DNA of 64,000 bases from Thalia democratica (taxonomy: Eukaryota), in NCBI GenBank assembly GCA_965202585.1, contig OZ241833.1:34286001-34350000 (forward strand), written 5' to 3'. The number at the start of each line of letters is the position of its first letter. Positions within the stretch are counted from its first letter, which is position 1. The notes beneath the pieces are model-generated. The model had not been told where the DNA came from and ran no database searches. It saw only the letters and a list, made by a program, of their open reading frames with translations. Shown piece by piece: positions 1,978 to 48,988 of this stretch. The position numbers were made by a program, and so were the translations under genes.

Positions 1978-1992
1978 GGCGACTTCAAGTCT
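1978..1992 (+). promoter_or_regulatory. BMP/Smad response element (Id-1 promoter)
   Basis: GGCGAC-TTCAA-GTCT(G), an exact GRCGNC-N5-GTCT match. Confidence 0.8.
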
Positions 1993-2136
1993 GCTCAATG
2001 CACGTGCAACCTCGAGAAAATTGAAAAAAAAAAAAATTAAGAGATGAAATACGAGATAGCGGGTGGTAATTGGGTGGGATAATGTGAAGAAACAACTCTG
2101 AGAGCTTGGAAGGAAAAAAAAAGGCAGTTTGTCGCG

Positions 2137-2144
2137 CATATAAG
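2137..2144 (+). promoter_or_regulatory. TATA-like box of Id-1
   Basis: CATATAAG about 70 bp before the ATG, conserved in Id-2 (15047..15054, minus). Confidence 0.6.
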
Positions 2145-2213
2145 CGGAGCTGAGCTGCAAAAAATTATTACTTCAAAGTCTGCAGCGGCAAGCACACAAG
2201 CTAAAAACTCAAA

Positions 2214-2510
2214 ATGGTAAAAGCAAGCAAAATAGTATCTTCCAGCGAAAACAAAATCAGCAAAAACTCTTTGGCCATCAAAAAGAACGACGATTTGAAA
2301 GTGAAGGAGACGCTTTCGAAGCTGCAAAATATCCTGCCAAAATGCTGCGATCAAAACATCCTGCCAAAGTGTGGCGATGAAGAGGACCAGCTTGAAATAA
2401 TTCAGCAGGCCATCTACTACATCCGGGACTTGAGCGAGTTGCTGAATAAACCTCAGATCTCAGGAATGAAAAAGATCAGTAATCAGAACATCGTGTCTTC
2501 TCCAGTGTGA
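2214..2510 (+). CDS. Id: Id/emc-like HLH protein lacking a basic region (Id-1, 98 aa)
   Basis: ATG-started ORF. TLSKLQNILP...QLEIIQQAIYYIRDL matches helix 1 and helix 2 of Id/emc (YSKLKELVP...EILQHVIDYI.DL), with no basic region ahead of helix 1. TATA-like CATATAAG about 70 bp upstream. Confidence 0.88.
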   Translation: MVKASKIVSSSENKISKNSLAIKKNDDLKVKETLSKLQNILPKCCDQNILPKCGDEEDQLEIIQQAIYYIRDLSELLNKPQISGMKKISNQNIVSSPV

Positions 2511-2530
2511 AATGCAGAATAACTTACAAG

Positions 2531-2829
2531 GTAAATATTTTATTTTAGATATTAAAAAGTTTAAACTATATACTAAACTTCTTGCGAGGTAAATATTTAT
2601 TTGTTTCACACGTTTTGAGTTGATAGTCAAAAAAGATATCAGCTTTTGATATATTTGTTAAAATATACTTAAGGTTTAATCTGTTTTTAACGTAAAAGTT
2701 AACAAAATATAGTTTAATAAAACATAAAAGTTATTTAAAACTGTATCATTCAAATGATTAGATGTTAAATGAAACACTAAAAATACACTTAATTAAGAAA
2801 CAAGTCACTTATGATGTACAATTTTTCAG
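2531..2829 (+). other. Predicted 3'-UTR intron of Id-1
   Basis: AG|GTAAAT donor 20 nt after the stop and TTTTTCAG acceptor. Similarity to Id-2 stops just after the donor and resumes at the acceptor. AATAAA at about 2976. Confidence 0.75.
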
Positions 2830-5601: not shown

Positions 5602-5755
5602 CATTAGCTTAATTTATAATACATTTATGCACATGTTCGTACGAAGGCAGACTTGTAGGCGCCGTAACACCTGGGTTAAAGTGAAAAACAAATACTATGA
5701 AAGTAGTGAAAAGTATATGAGTGAGGAGCTGAAATGAGGAAAAATTGTTGCGCTG
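5602..5755. repeat. Triplicated BRE-containing element, copy A
   Basis: About 100 bp identical to copies B and C. Contains AGAC-TTGTA-GGCGCC (5649..5663) and CACCTG (5668..5673). Confidence 0.9.
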
Positions 5756-9434: not shown

Positions 9435-9585
9435 CATTAGCTTAATTTATAATACATTTATGCACATGTTCGTACGAAGGCAGACTTGTAGGCGCCGTAA
9501 CACCTGGGTTAAAGTGAAAAACAAATACTATGAAGGTAGTGAAAAATATTAGTGGGGAGCTGAAATGAGGAAATTTGTTGCGCTG
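9435..9585. repeat. Triplicated BRE-containing element, copy B
   Basis: Direct repeat of copy A. BRE at 9482..9496. Confidence 0.9.
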
Positions 9586-10659: not shown

Positions 10660-10750
10660 CTCGCGCAGGTGAGCTTCAGATCCGCGTATCTAATTGGCAG
10701 ACATCAGGGCGCCTCGGAACACCTGCGAGCTTGCAATTATGACGTCACAA
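10660..10750. promoter_or_regulatory. Putative enhancer: BRE, two E-boxes and a CRE
   Basis: CAGGTG at about 10666, AGAC-ATCAG-GGCGCC 10699..10713, CACCTG 10720..10725 and TGACGTCA 10740..10747, all inside a GC-rich island. Confidence 0.65.
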
Positions 10751-13685: not shown

Positions 13686-13778
13686 TATTTAGACATTTAT
13701 AAACTTAATAATAAAAAAAAAGGAAAATTTTTTATTTAGACATTTATAAACTTAATAATAAAAAAAAAGGAAAATTTT
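13686..13778. repeat. 47-bp tandem duplication (x2)
   Basis: TATTTAGACATTTATAAACTTAATAATAAAAAAAAAGGAAAATTTT repeated. Confidence 0.85.
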
Positions 13779-14408
13779 CTAATACTATTTATTATTATTT
13801 TAGTTCTTTTTATGGTTATACCAAAAGGTAGAATAAAAAAAAATACTTTGCCTTTTAAAGTTAAATTTTTTCAGCGTATTTTGTCCTATGTTTTAAAAAT
13901 CGAATATTATTTTGGCTTTAAATGGTAGCTACTACTTAGCTTTAGTTATTATGATAAAGGTAAGTAAAGTTGCATCTCTTAGTTGAGTAAATTTGTAGCA
14001 ATCGTTTTAAACAACGAAATCCTGAGTTATTTTTCAATTCTATTTTAAACAAGTTTTCCGAGCAAGTCATCAAAAAGCTTAATTCGAAGATAAATTAAAA
14101 AAAAAAAATTCAGCTTCTTTTTAGTAAAATACTACAAAATATAAATTTTTATACTAACAAAATTTTATATTACATAAAAATAAAAGTTGTTTTTAACATA
14201 GTTTAATCACAACAAAAAGTTATGAAAACACACAAAAAAATCAACAAATAGAATTTTTTCTTCAGTTTTCAGCCCGCGCTAGCTTCCACTCGGCGAACAA
14301 CTTTCTTATTACGCTGTTTGTGACGTCATAGCTGCTGAAAAAACTCGTGGAAAGTTTAGCTGCTCCATCAGGCAAGTTTGTGAAAGTTGCAAAGTTCGTT
14401 TCAATTGT

Positions 14409-14660
14409 CTGAAAAATGAAAAATCATAAATGACATGTTTCATAACTAAATGCTTTTTTTGGTTTGTTGAAAAATACAAAGACTTCAACGATACAACTTT
14501 AACGTGTCTTTAATTTTAATTTTTTTTTTAAATGGTTTTAGTAACAATACAACAAATTTTAAGTTATAATTCAGTAAATGTATCAAAGGTTTAAATAATA
14601 TCATAAACTACTAATTGAACAATTTCAATACTGAAATAGCTGCAATAAAGTAATATTTAC
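14409..14660 (-). other. Predicted 3'-UTR intron of Id-2
   Basis: GAG|GTAAAT donor 19 nt after the stop and TTTTTCAG acceptor. The following exon (14408 to about 14262) aligns with Id-1 2830..2976. Confidence 0.75.
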
Positions 14661-14679: not shown

Positions 14680-14976
14680 TCACACTGGAGACGACACGAT
14701 GTTCTGATTACTGATCTTCTTCATTCCTGAAATCTGAGGTTTATTCAGCAACTCGCTCAAGTCCCGGATGTAGTAGATGGCCTGCTGAATTATTTCAAGC
14801 TGGTCCCCTTCATCGCCACACTTTGGCAGGATGTTTTGATCGCAGCATTTTGGCAGGATATTTTGCAGCTTCGAAAGCGTCTCCTTCACTTTCAAATCGT
14901 CGTTCTTTTTGATGGCCAAAGAGTTTTTGCTGATTTTGTTTTCGCTGGTTGATACTGCTTTGCTTGCTTTCACCAT
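14680..14976 (-). CDS. Id: Id/emc-like HLH protein (Id-2, 98 aa), inverted paralogue of Id-1
   Basis: 9 nucleotide differences from Id-1 over 297 nt by manual comparison. Same promoter and TATA-like box. Confidence 0.88.
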   Translation of the reverse strand: MVKASKAVSTSENKISKNSLAIKKNDDLKVKETLSKLQNILPKCCDQNILPKCGDEGDQLEIIQQAIYYIRDLSELLNKPQISGMKKISNQNIVSSPV

Positions 14977-15193
14977 TTTGAGTTTTTAGCTTGTGTGCTT
15001 GCTGCTACAGACTTTGAAGTAATAATTTTTTCTTGGCCCTGCTCCGCTTATATGCGCGACAAACCGCCTTTTTTACTTCCAAGCTCTCAGAGTTGTTTCT
15101 TTACATTATCCCACCCAATTACCACCCGCTATCTCGTATTTCATCTTTTTTAATTTTTTTTTCAATTTTCTCGAGGTTGCACGTGCATCGAGC

Positions 15194-15346
15194 AGACTTG
15201 AAGTCGCCAGCGCACCTGATTTGCAAGCAAACAATGAAGATTTTCAATGAAGATTTCTCCAGACTGGCTGGCGCCCCGCACCTGCAGCGAAAAGCGAAGA
15301 TTTTTTTTTGGTGAGAAAAATTTTCGCAGCCAGACTTGAAGTCGCC
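15194..15346 (-). promoter_or_regulatory. Triple BRE array (Id-2 promoter)
   Basis: Exact elements at 15194..15208, 15261..15275 and 15332..15346. GTGAGAA at 15311..15317. Confidence 0.8.
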
Positions 15347-16271
15347 AGTGCTCTAAACGCGAAAATGATTTGCTGCAGAAATGAAAATTAATTTTTGCAA
15401 CATTTTTTGCAGCTCCGATTGCCTTGTGCTGCAAAACTAAATATTATAAATATTTATTAATATTATTAATATTTAATTGTTAAAATATAATCAAAAATTT
15501 TATAAGAAAAAAAAGTATATCGGTTATTTTTAAAAACTTACTAGTTAACCCTAAAAAATCAATACAAAGAAAAACTTATTTTTGCAGCTCCTACACTGTT
15601 TTGTGCTGCAAAGTTGAAAGTTGATTTTGAAAACTTTTCTGATTTAAAAATCATTTGAAAGAGAAAAATTTGAGATTTTTTTCTAAATTTATAAGTTAAT
15701 CAATTTTTGAAAAAAAAACGTTTTGTAATCGAAATTTTCTTGCAAGTTAGACGTTTAAAACAAATTATAACTATTTTTAAGCTTGTTAGTCAACCCTTCG
15801 TATATTTCCGACATAAACTAAAATTTCTGGTTCTAAAATTTTTATCTCGACTAAAGTTAGTTTTTATAAGACTTATGTAACTTATAGACTTGAAAACACT
15901 AAACCAGTTGTCAGATATATTTAAAAAACGTTCAACTAAAAAATGTTACATCAACTTTTAACAATCCATTATTAGCTTTGAGCTTTAACTTTTTATTTTT
16001 CTGTATTAAATATACATAAAATTAAATATACAAAATTTTACTTTTAAAGCAGTAATTATAGGTTGAGCTAATATAATTTTTGTTAAAATGTTTGTTTAAG
16101 CACAATGGTTAAAAATATTTTTTTTTATGTTCTAAGTAGTTTTAGAATATTTATAGAAAACTATGTATTTTGATTAAAAAATAATTTAATAAACAGCTAA
16201 ATTTTAGTTTTTTTGTACTTTCAAATACTTGCTAGCTTAAACAAATGTGTTTCATAAGTCACGATTAATTT

Positions 16272-16313: not shown

Positions 16314-17522
16314 TGCAACAGTTGTAAAAACTTGCAACAGTAGTAAAAACTTATTGAAAAATCGTTTTGTAGATTAACTGAACTAATTAAACAATATTTG
16401 GTTAGTTTTTTTAAATTTTTAATAATTAACCAGTTTTGTTCAAATAACACTCATAGCGAAAATGAAGCATACACGTTTCACAATTCAAACAATTAGCAAG
16501 TGTATACAAAAAACTACGATGCTTTTGTAACTAATTTTTATTTTTTTAAAAACATCTTAATTGTTAATTATAGTGAGAAAACTATAAAATATCGTGAACA
16601 AACCATTTTGAGCACCTTAAGTAGTTTGTACACTCTTTTGAAGAAAACAAATATTATAAATGATATTATAAATACTAAAAATAAGTTTAGTGGTTATTCG
16701 TGCGGTAAGCACTTGTTTTGAAAATATATTTTATTTGCGCAACTTTTATCGTAAGTTAAGTGTTAACGAAAACAACAGTTTTTACGCGTTAAAAATAAGT
16801 TTTGTGGTTTAGCTTAGTAAATAATATGTTTTCAAAATAAACTTTTGTTTGTATGATTTAGTCGTAATCCTTAGTAGGTTGTTTTTTCTTGCAAAGCTAA
16901 CATTTACTATTATTTTACAATACAATAAATACTATTTTCTATTACCTCTTTTAACTGTGTTTAATCTGTGCTTAATTCAAAAAAAATTATTATTTTATAA
17001 CTATGCCATAATATCAATAATAAATTAATCTAGTAAATATGCAGTTTTACACAGAAATAGTAGTTTTTTCAGCTAATATATTTTAATTCCGATAAAGTTC
17101 TGAATGCTGTAAAACGTTTTCTTTCACTTGTAACAAAACACTTGAAAAAAGATTTCAACTTATTACCAAAAAAAGCTTTAAAAATTGTTTTAAAAGATCC
17201 AATACTTCAGAATGTTTTCTGTACACTAAAAAAAACTTTAATTCATTTTCTTGCAACTTACCTTGCACTGCAATACGACTGAAAAGTTAGCTAAGAAAAT
17301 GTTTATAATTTTAATTAAGAAAGTGTTAAAACATTAGACACGAAAACCATCAACAGAAATTAAAGACTAAAACATATTCTGCAATGCTTTTCAAAAAAAA
17401 AACACTAAAAAGTGTATAAAACCCTCAAACTTATTTTATCGCTGACAGCTTTGTAATTCACGCTGAAAAAATATTCATATTAAAAAAAATACGTCAAAAT
17501 AAAACTTTTCACAGCTTAAGCG

Positions 17523-17681
17523 TTCTCACAACGTCGCCCAGATGGAAAGAGTCGCCATGGCAACGTTCTTCCCACACGTTTCCATGGCAACCGACACGAC
17601 ATGAAAGGGGCCGGACCAGATGCGAGGTGACCACGCGACCCAGCCCTGGCAACCCTGGCGACAACTGCTTACCATGGCAAC
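17523..17681. promoter_or_regulatory. RFX X-box cluster with two Su(H)-type sites
   Basis: GTCGCCATGGCAAC 17551..17564, GTTTCCATGGCAAC 17578..17591, CTTACCATGGCAAC 17668..17681. TTCTCACA at 17523 and TTCCCACA at 17569. Confidence 0.6.
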
Positions 17682-20600
17682 CGAAAGTCGCAACAAACCG
17701 GTGTTTTGTACGGATCCCGCTGTGCATATTTATTTGCTTACGTCACAATGACTGTGACATCACCGCGAGCGGTATGAGAAAGGGAGCTGGATTCGCATTG
17801 GTAAACAGCTGCTTGTTTGCACTAGTGACGTACATCGTATAAATTTTGCCACAAAGTTCGGCTGAGCCAGGGCAGCTTGTGCAAGTCGGGGGTTTTTCTA
17901 GAAAAAGTTGCTCGCACTTTATAACAAAAACCTTCCGCGGCCGCATTTGTTTAAAGTGCAAAATACTATTCTAAAGCAACGAGATGAATAAAAAGCAGTA
18001 ATAAATCACCAGTAGTTAGTAACTATTTAAAAATTGGTGTAAGTGTAGGTTATACCTCAATTTTTAATTATTATTCTAAAACGTCTGTTTATCAGATAGA
18101 AAGTAGCTCGCAGGTTAAAAAAAATTAAAACGAGCTGAAAACAGCTATTAATATTTCGCGCGAAACTCAAGCTTCCGCGTTTGAATTGCGATTTGGATTT
18201 AGAAATAAAGAAACAAATTTGTTTTGTCGAAAGAAAGAACAAATTCGTTTAAACGTACTAAATTTGACTGCACGTTGTTAACGGGTCCATCATCAAAACA
18301 GCGCTTGTTTTTTTTTAACATGTAAGCAACTAAAACGAAAACTGGTTTATACTAGACACGTCAAATACTAACGACGTAGTTTAAACGCGGTGCCCTGTAT
18401 AGTTTTTTTTTACGTTATGATAAGTACAATAAACGAATCAGTTAAACGTCGCGATGTTAGTTTTTATACTTAGCCTCCAAACGCGAGTTACTTTTGCCAA
18501 TACTTGCCGATTTTCAATTCTTCAAATTCGCGCATTGAAGATTTTTTTTGCACGCAAATTAGGTTTGTCGCCTTGCAAATATTATTTTTGCAGGTGACAA
18601 TTTTCTGCAAAAACAATTTATTTCGCCTCAGAAAAAACGACTAAATAAAAACCTTCACTGATGCGCCATGACGACACAAGCAGGCACTTCAAAGGGGAGA
18701 AGACGCGCTAATTCGTCGCCATGACAGCCGAAGAAAAGAAGCGAGGGCGTAGGCACAGGTGTTGCGTGGAAATTTTCAATAATCCCATCTGCGCTTCAGA
18801 TCTAAGACAGACCTGAAAAGCCTGGTGCTTGACCTGAGGTGGATTAGACTTTTCAGCAATGTCAGTTTTTTTTTACGACTAATACTTGGAACTAAGTTAT
18901 AATCTGCTTAGCGAAAGAGGCGTTCAGTCGTAGAAATGTCTGATTTTTAACTTTTATTTTTTATAAACTGACCCTTTGTCTCTGATACATGAAAAAAAAA
19001 TTAATTCTTATGATAGTTATGACCTGTCAATATGACTGTGATAAATTTTGAACTGTTTGCAGCTTCGTTTTGTCAAAATGTATAAAACTAAATCTGTGTT
19101 AATATCGAAAACTTGTTAATAGGTTGTGAATCCAAAAATCAACTCTTTAAATTTTTTAGGCTTATTTAGGTAAAAGTCAAGGTAGGGAAGTTAAGATATA
19201 GTAACAAAACCTTGGTACATTTATTCATTGTAGATTAAAATTTAAAATATAAGTATAACCAGTTAAAGAATCAAAGAATCAAATCTAATTTCTACTTTGA
19301 TTTGAACTAAAAACAGTTAGTTAAAAGTTTATTAAAAGAATACGCTTACAATTGAATACAACAACCTTTAAAGTTAAGTTGAGAATCAAGTTAAAGTCTT
19401 TGCTATTTATTGAATATTACTTACCTCTTTTCACCCCTTAACAAAAACTAAGTCTTGATAAAGAACTTTTTTCAATAAATAACCAGAATTCTTACGAAAG
19501 CTCATTACACCTCTCTACGTTGGTTTAGTTAATCTAGTTCCAATCCCAAATTCGCCCCTTTTCTTTATTGAGGTTTGCAAACTTTTTTCAACACAAAACA
19601 ACAGCTTCCAAAGTACAAAAGAAATCGTGACGAGACTGCTTGCAAGATTAAGTCGTTAGAAAATAATTCTCAGCGAAATCTTGTTAACAAATCCGACCGC
19701 TTTATTGTTCTTGCGTAATTTAGAACTAACAGCTGGGTGGAAGATGGTCCCAGACGGCTTATAATTTCGTCAAAAACATGATTAATGCCTGATTGTTGTG
19801 TGAAGAAATTTTTTGTAATGTTTTTAATGCCGACAAGCAAGTATGGTTTTTTTTAAAAGTATTTGTAAGAGTAGGTGGAGCTTGCTTTTATAAAAGTTAA
19901 AACTCTGTATCTTTAGTATTTGAGTGGTTAGTAAAAAAATATATTGTGTTTTACTAGTATTTAGCTTATAAGTAAAGTTTATTGATATTTATCAATTATA
20001 ACTCTTATTAGTATCTACGTAAGAAAATTATTTTTTTAATTTTTAATGGTTTAATTAATATAGATACATATATGTATAAATTTCAACTGGTTAGTGTGTA
20101 TTGTTTATTGATAGATAAAAAAAAATTGTAACCTTATCAAAAATAAAAACCACTTGTTTATCTTGATATACAAAACCTAAGTTAAAGTTATGATATAAAA
20201 CACTTTTAAATTTATTTTTTGCTGTTGGAATAGAGTACAAAAAGATTACATAAAGGTATTGCTTAGTAAAGACTGATTGTTTGAAATACCTGTAAGTAGA
20301 AATATAAAACGCTAAAGTTTAAAAGTGGAACTTAATTCATTATTATCATACAAAAGTATGACTGCACATTGGACGTAGCTTTAATGAAAAACATCATCTA
20401 CTAAGCTGTAAAATTGTTTATACCTATAAAACTGCGTCAATACTATATAAAATAATCAAACTTTTTCTGTACTTGACTCACAAAATAAGCTTTTCTTAAC
20501 TTATAAAGTTTTTTTAGATGAATTCTAGAGTTTTTCCTGTTTATATTAAAAAGTTCGTTTAAAATTTTTGTTTTTACTTAGCCAATAGATTGGCAGTAAA

Positions 20601-24413: not shown

Positions 24414-24633
24414 TGGCGACTTCAAGTCTGGCTGCGAAAATTTTTCTCACCAAAAAAAATCTTCGCTTTTCGCTGCAGGTGCGGGGCGCCAGCCAGTCTG
24501 GAGAAACCTTCATTGAAAATCTTCATTGTTTGTTTGCAAATCAGGTGCGCTGGCGACTTCAAGTCTGCACTTGCACGTGCAACCTCGAGAAAATTGAAAA
24601 AGAGATGAAGTAAGAGATAGCGGGTGGTAATTG
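24414..24633 (+). promoter_or_regulatory. Orphan copy of the Id-2 promoter with three BREs and no downstream ORF
   Basis: About 220 bp closely matching the reverse complement of 15113..15348. BREs at 24415..24429, 24485..24499 and 24552..24566. Confidence 0.85.
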
Positions 24634-27600: not shown

Positions 27601-30110
27601 AAAGCAGATCTCAGCGTTAATTTTCAAATAACAACGGCAACGAAAAAACTATCAAAGTTGCGAAGCAATATTTGCTAACTGCTTCAAATTACCGACAATT
27701 GCTTGCATAAATGACACAAATTCTATTTTTATTAAATTTCCAACTGATAATGGCCGTCTGAAATGTTTCACAAGTGTGAAAATTAGATTAATGGAAAGTA
27801 GGTTACCGCATAAAACAACTTTCAATAATCGATTATTTACAGTCAATTATATTTTGAAAAAATTACTGGTAACTACGTCATCTAATCTTTGCAGCTTTGG
27901 TGTTTTTAAACATGGACAAAATTTACTGGCAAGTTGCTCGAAAAGTGCTAATGTTTATTCTTTTTAAAGTTATAAAACGCTTAAAAAACTTTGAAAACTG
28001 TAAAAAAACATTTTTATTGAAGGTTAGCAGTAATATAATTAGTTATTAAAAGTTTGTTACCTTATTACTTTTGAATGTTTTAAGTTCGGTTATATGACAA
28101 CATTTGGTAGAGAATTTTTTTAATTTTTACCTTGAAAAAGGTTAAAGTTGGTAAAAAAACTAAACAAGAGTATAAACATTCTCAATAAAAAGTTCAGTAT
28201 TATTTAAAGAATTTAAACTCACAATCACTTAAATTAAATATTGTGAAACTTTAAAAAAAGAATTACCAATATGTTTCTTACTTTAAGTTTTGTCGTACTT
28301 TTAGTTTATAAACTTACGACTGAAGTTTTGTTGTTTAAAACAATTTTAAAAACTGTATGTCACTTATTTAGATTAACAATGATGGCACAAACTTTCAAAA
28401 TTGTTTGAATATACTTTTTAAGAGAAAAGCTCCGTCATACACTACTATTAAAAATATTTTGTTCAAACAGTTCTTTTATTTACTTTTTGATTTACGTGAA
28501 CTAAATGAACACCAAAGGCTTTTAGCTTAGTTTAATTGTACATTGCTTACAATTTATTCGATTGTCAAGTTTTTTACCGAACTGGTTAATCAAACTATGA
28601 TAAACTGCAGCGACGCCTAGCTGTTATTTTTATTTAAAACGCTTGACAACAATATTTACGCTGTTCTGTAATATTTCAATTACACTAGTTTTAATAACTA
28701 GTTTTGCAAACTTTGAAGTAGATAACTTCAAGGATGAAAACATGGTATTATCAACAAAACGATCACTTTAAAGAATCAAATTACTTTTAAATCAAAAATT
28801 ATAAATATTTTCTACACAGAATGTTTCTATCAGCTGTATGGTTAATTTTGAGTTGCTGAACATAAGTAGTCAAGTATAACAAAAGTCAAACTTATTTATG
28901 TGCTTTATAAATACTTTCAAGTCACATAAGTTCCGATACTTTTATTCCGACCAATCTTTATAAAAAATTTACATAATTTATAATTTCAACTTAAAAAAAA
29001 ATTTAGACTAAGACTTTTTATACGTAGTAAAAAAGTACTCATTGTTAAAAAAATTAAATGTTTCATTTTGAAAATATCTGTTCTCAAAAACTTAAATTCA
29101 AGTATACACAGTTTAAATTAGATGTTTATTTATTTTTATGACTTATTGTTTAAAAAAAATATATTTCACTTTTATTAAATAAACTCTTGTTAGATTTCGA
29201 TGAACAAGAACCGGTTTTTAACAAAAAAGTATTATTTATCGAAAAAATTTTAAGACTAAAGAACTAAAGTTCAAAGCATAACCTTTTATTTAATGTGAAT
29301 TTCATAAAAATATTTTCATATTTTAGAAAAATAATACTCTGTAAATACTAAAATATCAAGTTAATCAAACAAAGACCGTTGATTAATGCAAAGTATTTGT
29401 TACCTTAATTGACATTTAAATTAGAAAAGGTTAAAGGAGTATTTGTCATTTAGTAATTAGCTCAATGAAAAAAAAAAAATAAATATAGTTTTAATCAATA
29501 AAAAGGTTAAATATTTATATTATTAACACAAAACTACAAGTTTAAAAAATTAGTTTAGTAAAAAGTGTGTTTTTATTAGTCTGTATTATGTACTAACTAA
29601 CATGTTTTAATTACTTAGTAATTTATAAAAAGGTTCTGATTATTAAACTTAATAAAAGTGTTTGCCATTATTTTTTTCTAAAGTTAACTAACTCTAGTAA
29701 TAATTAGTCATTTCATTTACTTCGAGTTAAAGTCGTAATCGCTTATTTTATTTTGAAATATTTGTAAAAATTCGTTCTTCTTTAAAACTTACTAAAATAC
29801 TAACAGGTTTAAATTTTCAAACTTTTTGTTAAAATAGTTATATGAAAATGTACGCTTTAAAACTATAGCTACAAACTATAAAATAGTGTATTCCATTACC
29901 AACATCTAATATTAAACTTTATGGCAATTTAACATTTATAGTACTAATCAAAACCTGATTTTTAGTTTGTCAAAAAAGGTCAACAAAACAAATTTTAAAA
30001 TAAAAACTTGTTACAGGCGCATATTTGCCCATGCAAGCTTTAACGACTTAAAAAAACGTGTTTTGTACAAGAAAGTCGGCAAACAAAAAACTTTTTGAAA
30101 TTTTTCTGCC

Positions 30111-30125
30111 AGACTTTACGGCGCC
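30111..30125 (-). promoter_or_regulatory. BRE 1.3 kb downstream of the divergent HLH gene
   Basis: AGAC-TTTAC-GGCGCC, an exact match. Confidence 0.6.
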
Positions 30126-31442
30126 TGCGAAGACAAATTAAAAGTTAATATGCTTTTACGTTATATAAAAAAATTGTGTCAACGTCCAGTGATAAACCAT
30201 GCTCAAACGAAAATTTACGATAATAATTTTTAGCTTTATCTATATATTTATTATTTACAAATTTTAAATGTTTTGAATTTATAATTTGACTGTTGAAAGA
30301 TACAAAAACTTTTCAAAGATTATTTCTGTAAAGTTTAAGCTTTGCTATTTTTGTTAAATTTAGTTTTAACACCAACATAAGGTAAATATATTAACATGAA
30401 ATAAAACATTAGAAATAAAGTAGAGATTTATAATTATATTTTTTCAAAAGTATTTAAATACATACTTTGAAAATTTGTTATAAACTTGTAAAAAAATTAT
30501 AAAGACTAGTTTAGTTTTTAAGCATCTTACTTATTTTTAAATATGTAAAAGTACCATGTATTTGTTTGCTATTATGCTTTTATAGTTAAGAAAACTTGCT
30601 TTTAAAACTTGTTAAGTTCAAATTTTTGGCTTTGTTAGATGTAATTTTGTATATAATCGTAAAATTTTGTTCGATAAAAGTTAAAACCAGCAAAAGTTAG
30701 TGATACATTTAAGTTATAATCTGTAAATCAAAAAGTTTGTGAACTTTTAAATCTTTAAAACTTATTTCTTTAAGTATTTTACTAACGAACTACAAATATT
30801 CATCATCATTCATCTTATAACACTTGAAAGTTATGCTAAAAAAATTTAGTACGTTTCTTTAAAAAATATAACTAATCTATCAAAATATATTTATACATGA
30901 ATAAAATTTGAACAAAACGTTTTATTTGAAAACAGTAGATAAGCAATAAAAAGTTTTGAGTTTTTTGTAAAACAATTTGCACAGTGTAAGGAAGCAAATC
31001 TATAAAAAAGTTATAAATAATTTTCAAAATAAAAAAATTCTCACTAAAATGCAGTTAATTCTGAAAACATTTTTAAATAGTGATTATTACTTTTTCGAAA
31101 CTACTAGAAGCTAAAAAAGTTGAACTTTTTCACAACGTAGTAAAATTTCTTTCAACTTGAAACTGGCTTACAGCTTTACAAGTACCGTAAAAAGAAGACT
31201 ACAAAAGCAGAACTAAACTATAAAAAAAAACTTTAAGCCTTTTCATTTTCAGTTCTTAAACTTTAATTTCACGTTAACATGATGAGTTTCTAAAACTAAA
31301 TAACATATTGAAGTTTAAGAGTTTAAAAAACAATTCAATTCGGTTTTTTCAAATTTGAATTTCACGATAAAACTCGAGTATAAAAAAAAAAACTAAACGC
31401 ATGTAAAAAGTTTTTGGGCAGTGACGTCATAACACCGTAGCT

Positions 31443-31742
31443 TCACCTCCGTCCGACCGTCCGCCCCTCGTCGTCGATGTTGACGAAGCAGTGTGACGTC
31501 ACAGTCCTCTTGCTCTCGTCACTGTTTCTTATGACGTCGTGCAGCAGCTTTATGTAGGCGGTGACGTCGCGCAAAACGGTGACGCAATCGCGCTCCGAAG
31601 CGACGTCACGACTTCTGGCGGGGACCAGCTCCCTGAGGTCGTCGAGCAAGTCCATCACCGCTCTGACGTCATTTTGTGAGTCTTTCGTGACGTCACGGTT
31701 GGTTTCGGACAAAATGCTGACGTCACTAGTTTGGATGCTCAT
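31443..31742 (-). CDS. Divergent basic-less HLH protein, Id/emc-like (99 aa from the first ATG)
   Basis: VMDLLDDLRELVP...CVTVLRDVTAYIKLLH fits the HLH helix 1/helix 2 pattern and there is no basic region. GC-rich ORF in AT-rich DNA. The track ORF starts at a TTG (31775); the first ATG is at 31742. Confidence 0.75.
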   Translation of the reverse strand: MSIQTSDVSILSETNRDVTKDSQNDVRAVMDLLDDLRELVPARSRDVASERDCVTVLRDVTAYIKLLHDVIRNSDESKRTVTSHCFVNIDDEGRTVGRR

Positions 31743-31767: not shown

Positions 31768-31831
31768 CTGAACAATCGGTAAATTTTTGTTTAAAAGTTA
31801 GTTACTTGTTGTTGTTTATATTTGTATTTAC
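31768..31831 (-). other. Predicted 64-bp 5'-UTR intron of the divergent HLH gene
   Basis: On the minus strand: AG|GTAAAT donor, TAACTAAC branch-like motif, and TTGTTCAG acceptor 25 nt before the ATG. Confidence 0.55.
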
Positions 31832-32890: not shown

Positions 32891-32918
32891 CAGGTGCGAG
32901 CCAGGCGCCTCGGTGTCT
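32891..32918 (+). promoter_or_regulatory. E-box plus BRE 1.2 kb upstream of the divergent HLH gene
   Basis: CAGGTG-CGAGCCA-GGCGCC-TCGGT-GTCTG. Confidence 0.7.
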
Positions 32919-41900: not shown

Positions 41901-42300
41901 TGAAACATACCCACCTCTAGTACATTTCACCCCGTTTAAACATGATTTGTAAGCATATATTAATTTTTATTAAGTACAAATTTAAGGTGTCAAATGTTTG
42001 TTGAAAATTTGTTTAAACAGATTTAAGGAAACATAACAGTAATCATATACTGCTTGCTTATAACCTACAGTTTTTCACATAATTTTTGCAACAGATTTAA
42101 ACTATTTTTACTTACTTCAATAGTATTTTACTTTATTGATTTGCATGTCTTTTTGGTAGGCTTTTTGCTGTGACTGTGACTTAAACAAAATAGCGCTTGG
42201 TACTCTAAGAAAATAAACTAATATCTACATTCTAGTTAGAAACAAGCTTCTTCCTTACAAAAAGTGCCTAAAACAAATGTTTTAATCACTTCTGACGAAC

Positions 42301-42776
42301 AAACTAAACGCAGTTAATTAAAAACGTTTGTGTACACAACTGCTGTATTGTTTTAATAGCGGAAAACGCGTCGCGCAGCTGACAAAACACAAATGTTATG
42401 CATGCGGTTTTTCGATAAAACGCCAAAATGTTCCTAATAAACACGTGTTCGTGTACCAACTCTCAGGTAAGCGAGTTAATTGGCAATGTTGACATTCGCA
42501 CATTTTGATCTTTGTACTTTTGCAGCTGCTCGCAACAACTCCTGTGGTGGCATCTGTTTGTTTTACAAGCAAGATAACAAATTAAATTTATTTTTGTGTT
42601 TTATAAAGTGCTTTTAAATAATCGTTGATAAGATCAAATTTATTTCCACACTCGTTTGAAGTTGACAGTTAAAAAATGTAAGGTACTCTATTATTTAACA
42701 AGGAAGCATGTTATATAAAGATTAACTTTACATTAGTCGACGTTTAATATACTTTAATTTGCTTGGTTTACATGCA
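42301..42776. repeat. ~475-bp inverted repeat, arm 1 (partner 56731..57204)
   Basis: Long colinear reverse-complement match (roughly 90% by eye), rich in E-boxes and GATA motifs. Confidence 0.9.
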
Positions 42777-44696
42777 AGATAAAAACGGGTTTAACTTATT
42801 TTCACATATAGTCAAAGTGTGTTAAATTATCATCAGTATGATGAAAACAATTTTCTAAATTTTATTCAAATACACCTTTAGAAATGTAAGATGTTTAAAT
42901 TTAATAAAAATATATGTAATACAGCGATTAACTTCAATTTCGCAATCTTTTAATCTTATTTACATCGTTTGAAACAGTTCTTTTTGAAACTAAATTACTT
43001 TATCTAGAACAACATGCGTTTAAAGGTGCATTATGACAGGAACATTCATAAATGTTTGTTCTTAAAAAAATTAACTAGTTTTTAGAACAAGCAAACATTG
43101 CACGCTATGTTTAATTTTTAGCTTATCTTGAATGAATTTTTAAATTTATTTTAACTTTGTATTCTCTTGAGCAGCTTTTAGAAAGTCTAATATTATTTCT
43201 CTAATGTACGACTATTGACAGTAACACTTTGAAAAAATATTTTTAAATTGCTTTTGACCATTTGATTTTAATGGTCCTGCTATAGTGCTTTTACAAAAAA
43301 ACAGAAACTGTTTTCATTTTACTTAATGAAAATTAATAAAACTTGAACAAGACTCAATTAAACATTTTAGTCTGTTCTGCTGTCTGAATAAACTGTTTTT
43401 ATACCGTTAAATCATAACAAAGAACTCATTTTATTATAAAATCAATGGTTCCTTTAGTTAAAGTTTTACAACTCAAAAACAAGTTTGTTCTTTGAAAGAA
43501 GCTACTGACTGATATACTCTAAAAACAAGTTTGTAACAAGACTTTGACTGTAGTTGTAAAATTTTTGTCAAGTCTAATTATAATATTTTATGCAAATTGA
43601 ACTTTAAAAATGTTAATAACAAGAATTGTATTGTAGTGTTAAAATTATAATTTTTGATATTAAACATTTTTCTGTCAGTGTTAGTTTAAAAATAAATGAT
43701 TGTTGTTCATTGAAACGTTTCAGATGCTGTAAAACAAGTAATGTACTATTATAAAGTCCTATTATAAATGAATAAAAGTTCAAATTTTATGAAAACAAAA
43801 AGTGTAAAATCAAATTGAATTGTGGTTTCTACAAAATGTTTCAAACTGAAGATTTTTTTGAAGTTTTTGAAAACTTAGGAAAAATTGATAAATAATTCTT
43901 TTCATTACTGCTTAATTTCAATTTAAAAATGTACAAACAAAGTGTTGTTTTTAATTGTTTTACATCTTTATCATTAGAAAGTCAGATAACTTAATTTTAG
44001 GTTTAAACTTTTGTAATTTATAGAAACTTTTACCGGCAGTTGTAACATTTTTTTTTAAGTAAAACAATATTAGTGATAAAATCATTAATAACAAGTAAAC
44101 AAACACAATGTTCTTATTTTATATCCTTTTTCATAATCTTTTTATTGTTAAGAGTAAATATTTGAACTTTGTATTTTTTTTTGTTTATTTGTACGCTTTT
44201 TTTATCATAAAAGTTAACTTAGATAAAGCTTTTTTAGTTTCACTGTTTCGAATCTAAACTGTTATAATTTTTTTTTATTTTAAACATTTATGTGTTTTAA
44301 TTAACTTAAATGTCATATAAGCAGGGTAAACCAGTTCAGCGAGTTCTAATAAGTAAACTTCTTTTAATAGTCTACACTAAAAACAATAAAAAAATTCACT
44401 TAGCCCAGTAATATCAAAAAATTGAAGATATTAAAATTATAAAAAATAGAAACAAACTTTTATAACTCAGACTTAAACTAATGATAATTTTTTGGTGCAA
44501 AATATAACATTATTTTTATCGGAAAAGTTTATAAAATGTAAAACAATCTACATTTATCATACTTAGTAAAAGTTAACTAGTCTAATAGTTTTACAGTCCG
44601 TATTTTTGATACTTAATTCAACGTAAATTTTATACATTTTTTACAAAAAGCAACTTTTACTGCGCAAAAACTTGCTCCTACTCTGAGCTTTTCCCT

Positions 44697-44824
44697 CCCC
44701 ACTCATATTTTTCACTACCTTCATAGTATTTGTTTTTCACTTTAACCCAGGTGTTACGGCGCCTACAAGTCTGCCTTCGTACGAACATGTGCATAAATGT
44801 ATTATAAATTAAGCTAATGTGTGT
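44697..44824. repeat. Triplicated BRE-containing element, copy C (inverted)
   Basis: Reverse complement of copies A and B. BRE at 44758..44772. Confidence 0.9.
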
Positions 44825-47800
44825 TTTGAATGAAATATTAAGTTGCTTGTTTACAAAGTCAATATTGCCTTGAATTGCTTTGAAAGTCGTTTTGAAAGTT
44901 GAACGAAAACATTATTGTAATCAAATACTGAGTTATATAAATATATGTTTTTTTGAATGTTTTGAAATGCCAAAGCTATTTGATTTGTTAATCGAGTGAA
45001 ACACTACTTGTTTAATAAACAAGCTTTAAATAAAATCCTGTAGAAGTTAGTTTACAATAGATAATTAAACTAATTTTAAAAAAGCGTTGTAAAAGTTTTA
45101 TATACAAAATATACGAAAGACAGCAGTATTATTTACAAGTTCCAAATCTGTTTTATTAAAAAAAAACTAAATGTTTATAACATAACAAGTTTGACTTAAA
45201 AATAATTTCAAGTTGCATTATAACCTACAAATAAAAACTTTTTAAATACAACTTAGATATAAGAAAAACTTTTTTATGATAAAAAATATTTTGTGGCATA
45301 GATAAGTTTTTTATTTTTCAAAAATAATTATGTAAAATGGCTTGAGTTTAAAAACTCATAGAAACTGATAGAAACTAGTTAGTAAGTAAAATTAAAAAAA
45401 AAAATTTATTCCATCAAAATGACTTAGCTTGTAAATAAATACGTCAAATTTTTTATTAATTAATCTCCACTTAACCACTAATACAGTGATCATGAACTTT
45501 TAAAATAATTCTTAAACTAAACTCATGTTTATTGTCAAGCCATCAACTTTCAAAATGTTTAAATTTAAGTTCTGTTATAAACTTTTTTGTAAGATTTACT
45601 ACTTAACTTAAGGTTAGTTTTTGTACGTTTTTTTGAAAACAACACATCAGTCACATGATATAAATTTACCATTTGACGGGAGTGACTTGGGATAGTTTAT
45701 TTTCAACTTTAGCAAAAAATCAGATAAACTTGTTTAACTTCAGTTACTTCTATTTTTAACGGCTTACGACTCCCTTGGTTAACATGTGACTTAGAACTAA
45801 ACTTTTCTGATAAGTGTTATCTAATCTATTGTTTTTGTACATGCTGACCCGGAGACTTCTTGACGCTTGTTTTAATCTGTTTTATCAAACAAGAGAAATA
45901 CTCGTTTAAAAACAGTTTTATGTTTTAATATTTTCTCGTCTTTTTGGTACAATTGGTCTCTTAAACTAGAGTAAAAAACTTAAAACTATTAATTCTTTTT
46001 TTATAGTAGTACAAAGTTGTTGCATAAAATATGTAATTAATAATTAGTTAGTTTTAAGCTATTAACAAAATGTATTTCAATCTGCTTTGATAAACACATT
46101 ATAAAAAAAAAGTTTTTTGTTTTATGTGTTTAATATTTATATGTAGTTTTTTGATAAAAATTTGAGATTACAATTGTGCAGTTATTCTATTTAACATACA
46201 TGTTAGAGTAGCAAAATGTTGTTGTATATATAAGTTTGACTTAAACAACAATAAGTAAAAACTATAGCGCTTAATATTAGCTATAAAGATTTCAAATTAA
46301 AGTTGTTTTAAGGTTCTAAGATAAAAACTACAGACTTTTAAAAACGCTTTTACAAGTGACTTGTTTTGTACAAACAAACAAAAAACAAAGTTTACATGCT
46401 AAGAGCTATATAAAAGCAAATCTATGATAAGTATTTAAAACATGAATATAGTGCAATAGAAATAGGGTACGGCCGTACGGGTCATTTAAAGTAAAAATAT
46501 ATTTTAGGTAGTATTGTATTAGATCTATTACTTTGTTTGGATAAACTAGTGCAAATTTTATTCAAGTTTTGTTGTTTATGAAAAAAAAACTATTTGATTT
46601 GCTGCAGTTAAATTCGTGCAAACTTTAAAACAAAAGTTTTGTGTAAATTCACAATAGACATTCGTAACATACTTTTTGTTTGATTAATTTTGTTAACCCA
46701 AAAATAAAAAGCTTAATTAAACCGTTGCGATTTCAAAATTAGTTTTTATTAAAGTTAAAAAATTGAATGTAAAAAAAAAAAAATAAACTAGTTAAAAAAA
46801 TTAAAATCAATTACTCAGTAGCATAAAAAAGAGTAAGCTAAAGGCATAGGTGCAAAACATTTTTAAGTATTTTGCTTTTTTAAATTTCATATAAACATTT
46901 TAGCTTCTCATGAACTTAGAACAAGAAAAACTTCTACTTTCAATAGTAGGACTGGTTTTTTTAAAGCACTTAACATTTTTATAAACTTTTTTAGAAAACT
47001 TTACTTCCAAAAACTTTGGAATTTATCTATCAGTTCAAGTGTTTTAATGTGCTGGTACTTAAAATTCAAAGTTCAAACCTGTCATTTGCTACTTAATGAA
47101 ATGTCAAATTAAAAACTGCGTTTTTGTGTCGATAAAATTGCTTAAAAACAGATTTTTTTTGGTTTCCTTAAATTTTTTTTGCATTGAGTTATTTTTAATA
47201 TCCATTGGCTTGTGCTCGTAATTTAAAAGATGCCTAATATTTTAAAGTAAAGTTTGATAACTATCAAAACAAGACTAACTTAAAAATTATATTATCAAAA
47301 GGTGATGTTAAAACTTATTGTCAAAAACGGATACAATGTTAAACATTTTTTTATCATTTTATAACTTTTCATAAATCCTTTTGTACTGAAACTTTTGTAA
47401 AGAAACAAAACTACAGTTTATTATTAATCTAATTAGTAGTCAAAATTAGATATAAGATTTAATTGAAAAATTTGAAGTTATTATTTAGCTACAAACGTTA
47501 GCCGTCCTTCGGTTTCGTTCAAAATCAATTTTTTTTTACGTTTACAAATAAAACAGAACAAGTTTGTTTGTATTTATTGAAAAAATTACACTTAAAAAGA
47601 CTTTCAACTTTAAAAATACAAGTTTGAGATATAACAATGATGTTTACTGGTAAGTATATCAAAAATCATACAAATAAGAAAAATGAAATGTTTTTTTCTC
47701 CTATTTTTGATGTTTACAGCTCTCTCTTCTGACTTGTCAGCTACAGCAAGGAATTAGAATAACTCAGCAATAATCTCCACTTCGTTCTACTTCATTTTCT

Positions 47801-48155
47801 GCGAATTTTAAGTTATATTTAATAGATATAAATAGGGATGCACTTCAATTCCGTATTTAAGTTGTAGTTATCTTAAAACTAGTAAGTTATTTTTTAAGCT
47901 TTGTTTAAATTAAAAAAACACATGTTCGTACATTTTAACTTAAGTTTGAAGAAAAACTAATAAGAAAATAAAAACATAATAAACATGTAGAAAAATTATT
48001 ACTTTTATACTAAACACTATGACTTCAACTCATGTTGATAGTTAAATCTATACGCTTTAGTTTTTAAGAGTTTAGGTTTAAAATAAAGCAAGTAGAAAAC
48101 AAAAACATGTCAAATGTATCAAAAAATACTAACCTTCATGATTTACCCTGAATAC

Positions 48156-48389
48156 TCAGACGGGGGCCAGAAGATCCCTCAAATCCTGTATGTAGTAGAT
48201 GGCCTGCTGAATTATTTCAAGCTGGTCCTCTTCATTGCAGCATTTTGGCAGGATGTTTTGCAGCTTCGAAAGCGTCTCCTTCACTTTCAAATCGTCGTTC
48301 TTTTTGATGGCCAACGAGTTTTTGCTGACTCCGTTCTGGGTGGCCACGTTTTCCTTGTTAGCTGAGCTTTTGCACTGCGGCTTCACCAT
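48156..48389 (-). CDS. Id: Id/emc-like HLH protein (Id-3, 77 aa)
   Basis: HLH core nearly identical to Id-1/2 but with a single QNILPKCC unit and a different N-terminus. Ends PV-stop followed by a GTAAAT donor 9 nt later (48146), mirroring Id-1/2. Confidence 0.85.
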   Translation of the reverse strand: MVKPQCKSSANKENVATQNGVSKNSLAIKKNDDLKVKETLSKLQNILPKCCNEEDQLEIIQQAIYYIQDLRDLLAPV

Positions 48390-48591
48390 TTTTTACTTTA
48401 AAGTTTTCTTTGTTGACACTCGTAGAAAGAAGTCAAACTTTTAAAGCAACTTAAATTTCTCTCCATACTTAAAGAGACGCTGAACTTCTTTTGCACGTTC
48501 TCTCGCGCTCGCTCGCTCCAATTTCTCTCCCACCTCAAATACGAGAGAGTGAGCGAAATTCAATTTTGTCGAGGTTGCACGTGCATCGAGC

Positions 48592-48988
48592 AGACTTGAA
48601 GTCGCCAGCGCACCTGATTTGCGAGCAAACAATGAAGATTTTCAATGAAGATTTCTCCAGACTGGCTGGCGCCCCGCACCTGCAGCGAAAAGCGAAGATT
48701 TTTTTTTAAAATATTTTTTTATTCAATTATTTTTTCTCGGTGTGAGAACGAAAGAGGAGGCCAGACTTGCCGTCGCCGGCCGATGGAAAACAATGGAAAG
48801 TAATTAAATAAGAAAGTTTTTGATTTCACGGCAATTTAATACAAATTTTGTGTGTGCTTTGTATTCTCAGTGCAACCTCTTTTTTTTGAGTAAAGTTTGT
48901 GTTTGCTGTTTAAATTAACTTTCGATTTTTTTAATGTTTGGTTTGATAAATATTTGATAAAATTTGAAACGCCAGACTGCGCGTCGCC
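48592..48988 (-). promoter_or_regulatory. Four-BRE array (Id-3 promoter)
   Basis: Exact elements at 48592..48606, 48659..48673, 48763..48777 and 48974..48988. GTGAGAA at 48742..48748. Confidence 0.8.

What the first reader, a model, noticed from the sequence alone, without database searches (positions are those of the whole stretch)
1978..48988. Four-gene Id/emc-like cluster saturated with exact bipartite BMP-Smad elements
Seen: 17 exact GRCGNC-N5-GTCT matches (starts at 1978, 5649, 9482, 10699, 15194, 15261, 15332, 24415, 24485, 24552, 30111, 32904, 44758, 48592, 48659, 48763, 48974). All are GGCG[A/C]C-N5-GTCTG with 8 different spacers, so the count is not just copying. A rough estimate at 25-30% GC predicts well under one match in the window, and I saw none beyond 49 kb. 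Established: this is the Mad/Medea/Schnurri element of Drosophila and the Smad1/5-Smad4 BRE of vertebrate Id genes, and Id genes are direct BMP targets. Inference: the whole ~50-kb domain is one BMP-wired regulatory landscape serving an expanded HLH-inhibitor cluster.
Basis: partly seen in the sequence, partly recalled or inferred. Interest (0 to 1): 0.85.

Follow-up and report, generated by a model that had tools for sequence, protein, structure and literature searches.

The report
BMP response elements around Id genes
A cluster of four small Id-type (HLH inhibitor) genes in what is probably a pelagic tunicate is ringed by 17 exact copies of the Smad "BMP response element" of vertebrate Id genes. 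Most copies are fused to a CAGGTG E-box, and an ascidian has the same arrangement, so BMP-to-Id wiring seems to survive in tunicates in a rewritten form.

Summary
There are 17 GGCG[A/C]C-N5-GTCTG sites against 0.04 expected. Spacers of 0-4 and 6-11 bp give 0-1 sites each. Allowing one mismatch adds no new site.

The count is inflated by copying: the 17 sites fall into 8 sequence families, or 6-8 independent origins.

The genes are real Id-family HLH genes. A family profile hits PDB ID-2, ID-1 and ID-3 first (E 1e-8 to 1e-5). A spliced metatranscriptome contig places three elements 171-323 bp upstream of the Id-2 RNA 5' end, behind a TATA box.

The elements are under constraint:
- They are the invariant block in promoters of related wild contigs.
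- One singleton sits in a 100-bp island of 90-97% identity, against 71% overall.
- The Id-like cluster of the ascidian Clavelina carries 6 such sites, and a relative carries 5.

New here: 12 of the 17 sites (5 of 8 families), 5 of 6 Clavelina sites and 4 of 5 sites in the relative have an oriented CAGGTG 3-7 bp upstream of the GC box.

Best reading: these are Smad1/5-Smad4 BMP response elements coupled to an E-box factor. Smad binding and BMP response are inferred, not shown. Other first-stage notes of this scan had already flagged parts of this same window.

The parts
1968..2006 (+). Id-1 proximal composite: CAGGTG, 4 nt, GGCGAC-N5-GTCTG, 8 nt, CACGTG. The TATA box (CATATAAG) lies at 2137.
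2214..2510 (+). Id-1 coding sequence (98 aa HLH protein without a basic region)
5602..5716 (-). 3' element D, copy 1 (E-box-BRE composite at 5649-5673), 3.1 kb past the Id-1 stop codon
9430..9559 (-). 3' element D, copy 2 (composite at 9482-9506)
   Evidence: summed contig depth in the bin holding it about 1.6-3.3x the adjacent bin
10699..10747 (-). Singleton element: TGACGTCA (CRE), 13 nt, CAGGTG, 6 nt, GGCGCC-N5-GTCTG. An inverted CACCTG lies 27 nt downstream. Its motif content is the closest to Bicore1.
14255..14408 (-). Id-2 exon 2 (3' UTR) as far as the RNA contig matches. A 252-nt GT..AG intron spans 14409-14660.
14680..14976 (-). Id-2 coding sequence (98 aa). The RNA contig's 5' end is at 15023 and the TATA box at 15052.
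15161..15346 (-). Id-2 promoter module with three BREs at -171..-185 (A, with E-box and CACGTG), -238..-252 (B, with E-box) and -309..-323 (C, no E-box)
24415..24600 (+). Orphan copy of the C-B-A promoter module (three BREs). No TATA box and no HLH ORF follow it.
30046..30144 (-). Conserved non-coding island holding the singleton BRE at 30111-30125, 1.3 kb past the stop codon of the divergent HLH gene
31443..31742 (-). Divergent fourth HLH gene (ATG at 31742; the ORF lister starts it at the TTG at 31775). Its ortholog P0008 sits on a Tara scaffold.
32891..32918 (+). Singleton E-box-BRE composite (gap 7), 1.1 kb upstream of the divergent HLH gene
44695..44824 (+). 3' element D, copy 3 (composite at 44748-44772), 3.4 kb past the Id-3 stop codon
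48156..48389 (-). Id-3 coding sequence (77 aa)
48559..48988 (-). Id-3 upstream region with four BREs (48592 A, 48659 B, 48763, 48974)

Best explanation
The sites are BMP response elements of the 'ID type'. A Smad1/5 MH1 domain binds the GC box (GGCG[A/C]C). A Smad4 MH1 domain binds GTCTG exactly 5 bp away. Together they make the Id paralogs direct BMP targets, most likely activated as in vertebrates and sea urchin.

Each canonical Id gene has 1-4 such elements within about 600 bp upstream of its ATG (about 170-330 bp from the RNA 5' end for Id-2), behind a TATA box. Each also has a copy of a 115-130-bp 3' element.

Most elements are tripartite. An oriented CAGGTG E-box lies 3-7 bp upstream of the GC box, so Smad input is read together with an E-box factor. 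That factor could be a class I bHLH E-protein, which is the very target of Id and would give built-in negative feedback. It could also be a Snail or ZEB zinc-finger repressor.

Shown: motif excess, strict 5-bp spacing, conservation within and between species, Id identity of the genes, and transcription and splicing of Id-2.
Inferred: Smad binding, BMP dependence, the sign of regulation, and the identity of the E-box factor.
For: 1. There are 17 exact sites against 0.04 expected, only at N5, with no one-mismatch halo.
2. The motif equals the GGCGCC-N5-GTCTG element found in SMAD1-bound regions of ID1/2/3/4. In human reporters it is sufficient for a BMP-specific response, needs the 5-bp spacer and this SBE orientation, and grows stronger when multimerised (PMC11907993).
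3. The genes are Id. Pfam HLH matches cover only profile positions 15-53, so there is no basic region. Profile A4 hits ID-2, ID-1 and ID-3 structures first, at E 1.3e-8 to 1.4e-5.
4. In an alignment of 8 promoters (4 from the window, 4 wild contigs including one whose protein is 63% identical), the block from E-box through BRE to CACGTG is 32/37 invariant, against 22/96 elsewhere. Fisher p = 1.7e-11.
5. The singleton BRE at 30111 lies in a 100-bp island of 90-97% identity, against 70.6% overall, in a related species' scaffold.
6. The Clavelina lepadiformis Id-like cluster has 6 BREs (0.02 expected per 20 kb). A relative's locus has 5. Other spacers give 0-1.
7. The composite CAGGTG-N3-7-BRE occurs 12 times in the window and 0 times in shuffles. 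It covers 5 of 6 Clavelina sites and 4 of 5 in the relative. The orientation is never CACCTG and no other E-box type appears.
8. A spliced RNA contig and the TATA box place the Id-2 BREs upstream of the transcribed region.
Against: - There is no occupancy or expression-response data.
- Nine of the 17 sites carry GGCGAC. In human reporters any substitution in the GC box lowered the response, so these sites may be weak.
- In Drosophila the same GRCGNC-N5-GTCTG sequence is a Schnurri-dependent silencer, so the sign of regulation is open.
- Paralogous copies at 93-99% identity mean part of the apparent 'conservation' inside this genome is gene conversion or recent copying, not independent selection.
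- One more distant Id-like locus (L011, a compact genome) has no BRE in 1 kb upstream and 10 kb downstream.
- The organism is identified only indirectly.
Confidence: 0.7

Rival explanations
1. The same elements bind Smads but act as BMP-dependent silencers by recruiting a Schnurri/HIVEP-type corepressor, as at Drosophila brk. BMP would then switch the Id cluster off.
For: All 17 sites have the full GTCTG, and the GC box follows the Drosophila silencer rule GRCGNC, including GGCGAC. PMC11907993 recalls that the 5-bp spacing is what Schnurri recruitment needs.
Against: In vertebrates and sea urchin the same element upstream of Id activates (PMC3410860; PMC11907993). In Drosophila, emc is reported not to respond to Dpp. 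The promoter-proximal, multimerised layout next to a TATA box resembles activating BRE reporters.
Confidence: 0.12
2. The 25-28-bp unit is read by some other factor or complex, not Smads. One candidate is a multi-zinc-finger or CTCF-like architectural protein that contacts CAGGTG and the GC box. The match to the BRE would then be coincidental.
For: CAGGTG followed by a GC-rich stretch recalls the CTCF core (from memory). The whole block, including the non-Smad bases 'CG' after CAGGTG, is invariant.
Against: The E-box-to-GC-box gap varies (3, 4, 6, 7), while the GC-box-to-GTCTG gap never does. This argues for two separate readers, one of them with Smad-like geometry. Five of 17 sites lack the E-box entirely yet keep the exact bipartite motif, and one of these is a conserved island. 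The CTCF core would need the two boxes to overlap.
Confidence: 0.08
3. The excess comes mainly from copying: a short repeat or mobile element, or duplicated promoter pieces, that happened to carry the motif, with no selection on the motif itself.
For: Nine of the 17 sites are extra paralogous copies. Element D is a sharply bounded 115-130-bp block at 98-99% identity in three places. Other notes in this genome report patchy gene conversion.
Against: The 6-8 families have unrelated flanks and 8 different spacers. Summed contig depth in the 200-bp bin holding element D is only about 1.6-3.3 times that of the adjacent bin, not repeat-like, although the tool warns that depth is not copy number. The motif is conserved where flanks diverge, both in wild relatives and in an ascidian.
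Confidence: 0.05

Closest known systems
ID-type BMP response element of vertebrate ID1-4 (GGCGCC-N5-GTCTG; Korchynskyi & ten Dijke 2002; Lopez-Rovira 2002; dissected in PMC11907993)
   Same: Same two half-sites, same orientation and the same obligatory 5-bp spacer. It lies next to Id genes and several copies occur per gene.
   Different: Half of the sites use GGCGAC. There are up to 4 copies within 400 bp of one promoter and 17 in 47 kb. Most copies are fused to a CAGGTG E-box, which is absent from the vertebrate sequences I could read.
Bicore1, the bilaterian-conserved Id enhancer (Clarke et al. 2012, PMC3410860)
   Same: It is a BMP-responsive element tied to Id genes, and its 3' end is a GGCG(C/T)C-N5-GTCTG unit. 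The window's 10699 element also has the perfect TGACGTCA palindrome upstream of its BRE.
   Different: Bicore1 has a fixed order (E2F-like site, GC box, TGACGTCA, BRE), is always 5' of Id, and was not detectable in tunicates. Here no element aligns to it. In the proximal units a CAGGTG precedes the BRE where Bicore1 has the CRE, and a CACGTG palindrome follows it. The only CRE-bearing copy lies 3' of the genes, with an E-box inserted between CRE and BRE.
Drosophila Dpp silencer element (GRCGNC-N5-GTCTG, Mad/Medea/Schnurri) of brk, bam and gbb
   Same: The sequence rule is met by all 17 sites, including the G after GTCT.
   Different: The Drosophila element represses, and it is not associated with emc. 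Schnurri involvement cannot be tested here.
E-box plus Smad-site composites: HAMP promoter (BMP-RE with E-boxes; PMC4232863, abstract seen) and SNAIL1-SMAD3/4 repressor sites (from memory)
   Same: A Smad site is read together with a neighbouring E-box factor.
   Different: Those cases have no fixed 3-7-bp oriented CAGGTG next to a full bipartite BRE, and they are not at Id genes.

Membership tests
ID-type BMP response element (Smad1/5-Smad4 composite) | GC-rich Smad box GGCGCC (C at position 6 essential) | tested here: met
   8 sites read GGCGCC and 9 read GGCGAC. All keep C6. The A5 variant is expected to be weaker, by analogy with human reporters in which any GC-box substitution lowered the response.
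ID-type BMP response element (Smad1/5-Smad4 composite) | SBE GTCT(G) on the same strand, exactly 5 bp from the GC box | tested here: met
   17 of 17 sites comply. Other spacers of 0-11 bp give 0-1 sites.
ID-type BMP response element (Smad1/5-Smad4 composite) | Binding of phospho-Smad1/5 and Smad4, and BMP-dependent transcription | not testable with these tools
   Needs ChIP or CUT&RUN, EMSA and reporters.
ID-type BMP response element (Smad1/5-Smad4 composite) | Evolutionary constraint on the motif rather than on its flanks | tested here: met
   32/37 against 22/96 invariant; conserved island; ascidian loci with different spacers
Bicore1 enhancer | Alignable ~100-bp block with fixed order: E2F-like site, GC box, TGACGTCA, BRE | tested here: not met
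   No window element shows this order. Only the 10699 element has TGACGTCA near a BRE, and an E-box lies between them.
Bicore1 enhancer | Location 5' of the Id gene | tested here: not met
   The CRE-bearing element at 10699 lies 3' of both Id-1 and Id-2. Table S4 of PMC3410860 lists all Bicore1 instances as 5'.
Drosophila Schnurri-type silencer element | GRCGNC-N5-GTCTG sequence | tested here: met
Drosophila Schnurri-type silencer element | Schnurri recruitment and BMP-dependent repression | not testable with these tools
   No functional data. No Schnurri gene was searched for in this genome.
Id/Emc (class V/D HLH inhibitors) | HLH dimerisation domain most similar to Id proteins | tested here: met
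   Profile A4 hits ID-2 at 1.3e-8, ID-1 at 2.5e-8 and ID-3 at 1.4e-5, ahead of MyoD and ASCL1. Helix 2 aligns to EILQHVIDYI.DL.
Id/Emc (class V/D HLH inhibitors) | No basic DNA-binding region before helix 1 | tested here: met
   Pfam HLH matches start at profile position 15-19 of 53 in all members. No E-R-x-R signature appears in alignment A1 or A4.
Id/Emc (class V/D HLH inhibitors) | Small protein that sequesters E-proteins | not testable with these tools
   The size fits (77-110 aa). Binding is untested.

The most novel reading that the evidence does not exclude
Tunicates did not lose the ancient BMP-to-Id enhancer logic. They rewrote it into a compact tripartite unit, oriented CAGGTG, 3-7 bp, GGCG[A/C]C, 5 bp, GTCTG. 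In this unit BMP-Smads and an E-protein, the very factor that Id sequesters, must co-occupy one 25-28-bp site. Each copy would then be an AND gate with built-in negative feedback, and the number of copies (1, 3, 4 or 1 per promoter, plus 3' copies) would set paralog-specific BMP thresholds.
Probability: 0.3. Interest if true: 0.72.

Novelty: new variant of a known kind. Interest (0 to 1): 0.58.

Why it matters
Id genes are the textbook direct BMP targets. Their BRE-bearing enhancer (Bicore1) is one of only two enhancers reported as conserved between deuterostomes and protostomes. Tunicates were one of three lineages where that study found no trace of it and suggested it was lost (PMC3410860).

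This window and the Clavelina loci show that the Smad core survives around tunicate Id genes, multiplied and coupled to a different neighbour motif. That makes enhancer 'grammar turnover with retained input' testable by electroporation in ascidians.

It also supplies a 25-28-bp candidate BMP reporter element native to tunicates. It offers a concrete hypothesis for how BMP and the E-protein/Id balance are integrated.

Tried and rejected
- Chance or base composition: rejected by shuffles and spacer controls.
- Mobile element or simple copying: explains 9 of the 17 sites, but not the 6-8 independent contexts or the cross-species conservation.
- CTCF-like single reader: the variable E-box gap against the fixed Smad gap argues against it.
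- Homology of the proximal unit to Bicore1: only short resemblances, such as GCGCTGGCG.C-N5-GTCTGCT shared with the zebrafish sequence read. This is too short to claim.
- Single-sequence PDB search of Id-2: no significant hit. Profiles were needed.
- Word-indexed homolog search with the Clavelina protein: found only itself.
- Homolog search with the RING ORF, to name the organism: only unnamed metagenome proteins.
- Rfam and tRNA scans of the window: nothing.
- Literature searches for an ascidian BRE, a Ciona Emc-BMP link, or a CAGGTG-BRE composite: nothing relevant in the held library.
- L011, an Id-like locus from a compact genome: no BRE.
- Metagenome-wide pattern scan: not run, because chance hits in bacterial DNA would swamp a 17-base pattern.


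Full report
OBSERVATION

Dinucleotide-preserving shuffles give a mean of 0.04 and a maximum of 1. All 17 read GGCG[A/C]C-N5-GTCTG, with eight different spacers.

The window is 24-31% G+C. It holds 81 GRCGNC and 234 GTCT half-sites. Even so, spacers of 0-4 and 6-11 bp give 0,0,1,0,0 and 0,0,0,1,1,0 matches, against 17 at 5 bp.

Scanning GGCGCC-N5-GTCTG with one mismatch allowed returns the same 17 sites and no others. The motif class is sharply bounded, and the only tolerated variant is A at position 5 of the GC box. No site lies beyond 48988.

HOW MANY SITES ARE INDEPENDENT

Repeat finding and alignments show that many sites are paralogous copies.
- A proximal unit, A, occurs at 1978, 15194, 24552 and 48592.
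- A second unit, B, occurs at 15261, 24485 and 48659.
- A third unit, C, occurs at 15332 and 24415. The site at 48763 is its positional counterpart.
- A sharply bounded 115-130-bp element, D, occurs at 5649, 9482 and 44758 at 98-99% identity, with unrelated flanks.
- Four sites are singletons: 10699, 30111, 32904 and 48974.

So 17 sites reduce to 8 sequence families, or 6-8 independent origins. That is still orders of magnitude above chance.

The promoter modules of Id-2 and Id-3 are 99% identical over 149 nt, while their coding sequences are 87-91% identical. A related species' promoter (L002) differs at non-motif positions. This pattern points to concerted evolution (gene conversion) inside this genome, as other notes on this genome suggest for other loci.

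Summed contig depth in the 200-bp bin holding element D is about 1.6-3.3 times that of the adjacent bin in two DNA runs. That fits a few copies, not a high-copy repeat. The tool warns that this depth is not a copy number.

THE GENES

Four small ORFs carry an HLH:
- 2214-2510 (+)
- 14680-14976 (-)
- 48156-48389 (-)
- a divergent one at 31443-31742 (-)

Pfam HLH matches are weak. They always cover only profile positions about 15-53, that is, the two helices without the basic region.

An exhaustive profile search found 29 relatives. They include two proteins of the ascidian Clavelina lepadiformis that the source names 'BHLH domain-containing protein'. A profile of 18 of these sequences hits the solved structures of ID-2 (E 1.3e-8), ID-1 (2.5e-8) and ID-3 (1.4e-5) ahead of every DNA-binding bHLH. 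A shallower profile gave the same order. The genes are therefore Id/Emc-class HLH inhibitors.

Near-identical genes occur on Tara Oceans metagenome contigs, and marine metatranscriptomes hold the transcript. Together with the Clavelina affinity, this suggests a pelagic tunicate. That is an inference: a search with the neighbouring RING gene gave no named relatives.

TRANSCRIPT AND PROMOTER ANATOMY

A 592-nt metatranscriptome contig matches 15023 down to about 14661, then 14408 down to 14255. It skips 252 nt bounded by GTAAAT...TTTTTCAG. This is a spliced mRNA with an intron in the 3' UTR.

A CATATAAG box at 15052 lies 29 nt upstream of the contig's 5' end. There is almost no RNA depth in the 15000-15199 bin (which reaches the contig's 5' end at 15023) and none in 15200-15399, so the BREs lie outside the transcribed region.

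The three Id-2 BREs therefore sit at -171..-185, -238..-252 and -309..-323. All are in the gene's orientation.

Id-1 has one BRE and Id-3 has four. The module at 24415-24600 has three but lacks a TATA box and an ORF.

Each canonical gene also has a D copy 3-5 kb past its stop codon.

EVIDENCE OF CONSTRAINT

1. Every wild contig that reaches at least 215 bp upstream of the ATG keeps the proximal unit. This includes L003, whose protein is only 63% identical. In the 8-sequence promoter alignment, the block from CAGGTG through the BRE to CACGTG is invariant at 32 of 37 columns. The rest of the alignment is invariant at 22 of 96 (Fisher p 1.7e-11). The caveat is that the sequences are related and some are paralogs.

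2. A Tara scaffold (L012) is colinear with 32823-28419 at 70.6% identity. The singleton BRE at 30111 lies in a 100-bp island of 90-97% identity. This is one of four conserved non-coding islands.

3. In Clavelina, about 41 kb fetched around three Id-like genes (two stretches, with a 1.5-kb gap between them) holds 6 BREs. The expectation is 0.02 per 20 kb. The locus of a relative (L010) holds 5, against 0.07 expected. Other spacers give 0-1. Orthologous Clavelina and L010 sites keep the motif bases while their spacers differ.

A THIRD MOTIF

Twelve of the 17 sites, representing 5 of the 8 families, have CAGGTG 3-7 bp upstream of the GC box. The orientation is always this one, never CACCTG, and no other E-box type appears.

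The composite pattern occurs 12 times in the window and 0 times in 100 shuffles. Only 29 CAGGTG sites exist in the whole window, on both strands.

The same composite accounts for 5 of 6 Clavelina BREs and 4 of 5 L010 BREs, with gaps of 4 or 6.

The base after CAGGTG is always C or T, most often followed by G. From memory, this fits both E-protein and Snail/ZEB preferences, so it does not discriminate between them.

The proximal unit A additionally has an invariant palindrome, GCACGTGC, 7-8 bp after GTCTG.

The variable E-box gap contrasts with the rigid Smad gap. This argues for two readers rather than one long-footprint protein.

COMPARISON WITH WHAT IS KNOWN

PMC11907993 shows in human cells that GGCGCC-N5-GTCTG, the motif in SMAD1-bound regions of ID1-4, is a minimal BMP-specific element. 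According to that paper:
- the 5-bp spacer and the SBE orientation are obligatory;
- any GC-box substitution lowers the response, and C6 is essential;
- two or three copies raise the response;
- such motifs are rare in the genome.

It also recalls that the same rule defines the Drosophila Schnurri-dependent silencer.

PMC3410860 describes Bicore1, a BMP-responsive Id enhancer conserved from human to molluscs. Its 3' end is this BRE, preceded by a perfect TGACGTCA. The paper states that no Bicore homology could be found in tunicates and suggests it was lost there.

None of the window's elements aligns to Bicore1. The element at 10699 does have TGACGTCA, 13 nt, CAGGTG, 6 nt, then the BRE, but it lies 3' of Id-1 and Id-2.

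I found no paper in the held library describing a BRE at a tunicate Id gene or a CAGGTG-BRE composite.

MECHANISM

Most likely (0.7): these are Smad1/5-Smad4 response elements that make the Id paralogs direct BMP targets. By analogy with vertebrates and sea urchin they are probably activated. Most copies would be read jointly with an E-box factor.
- If that factor is an E-protein, Id would damp its own induction.
- If it is Snail or ZEB, the E-box would gate where BMP can act.

Copy number differs between paralogs (1, 3, 4 and 1, plus the orphan 3). Since multimerisation raises sensitivity in reporters, this could set different thresholds.

Rivals:
- Schnurri-type silencing (0.12)
- a non-Smad reader (0.08)
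- mere copying (0.05)

Points against the main reading, or still open:
- There are no functional data.
- GGCGAC sites may be weak.
- The sign of regulation is unknown.
- One compact-genome Id-like locus (L011) has no BRE.

VERDICT

The BRE-Id link itself is known biology. New here are the extreme multiplication, the survival of the Smad core in a lineage where the ancestral enhancer was reported as undetectable, and the conserved oriented E-box partner. Other first-stage notes on this same window had already pointed to the E-box, the 3' element, the orphan promoter and the dose series. I saw the E-box independently and tested these points here.

Noticed in passing
window 15300-15330, 24431-24455, 48735-48762: A TTCTCAC (Su(H)/CSL-like GTGAGAA) site follows BRE-C and its Id-3 counterpart at a similar distance. 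It is kept in the wild contig L002. It may be a Notch input, as another first-stage note also says.
   Followed up: partly
window 31443-31742 (-): Six of the eight GACGTC palindromes in and near the divergent HLH gene are in-frame Asp-Val codon pairs (residues such as SDVS, RDVT, NDVR). They look like a coding feature rather than CRE sites.
   Followed up: partly
window 2214-2510 and 14680-14976: Id-1 and Id-2 carry a 9-residue tandem duplication in the HLH loop (QNILPKCCD QNILPKCGD). It is absent from Id-3 and from most wild relatives, but present in the Tara protein P0001.
   Followed up: no
window 42301-42756 and 56750-57204: Inverted repeat arms of 153 and 268 nt at 93-97% identity lie 14 kb apart and bracket Id-3, its BREs and the RING-gene side. 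Their nature is unknown.
   Followed up: no
window 60287-60865 (-): A 192-aa coiled-coil plus RING-H2 ORF belongs to a large family seen only on unnamed marine metagenome contigs (50 hits, E down to 1e-49). It looks like a lineage-specific expansion.
   Followed up: partly
L009 9576-9610 and L010 9598-9632: Just 3' of the proximal E-box-BRE in Clavelina and its relative lies a conserved ACACACCT (T-box half-site-like) followed by CCGCAATCT.
   Followed up: no
window 24600-24665: The orphan promoter module is followed by a G-run (GGGGGGTGGGGGGGGGG) in place of the TATA region of Id-1 and Id-2.
   Followed up: no
window 17500-17960: A locally G+C-richer patch has overlapping ORFs on both strands and no family match was sought. 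Its meaning is unknown.
   Followed up: no
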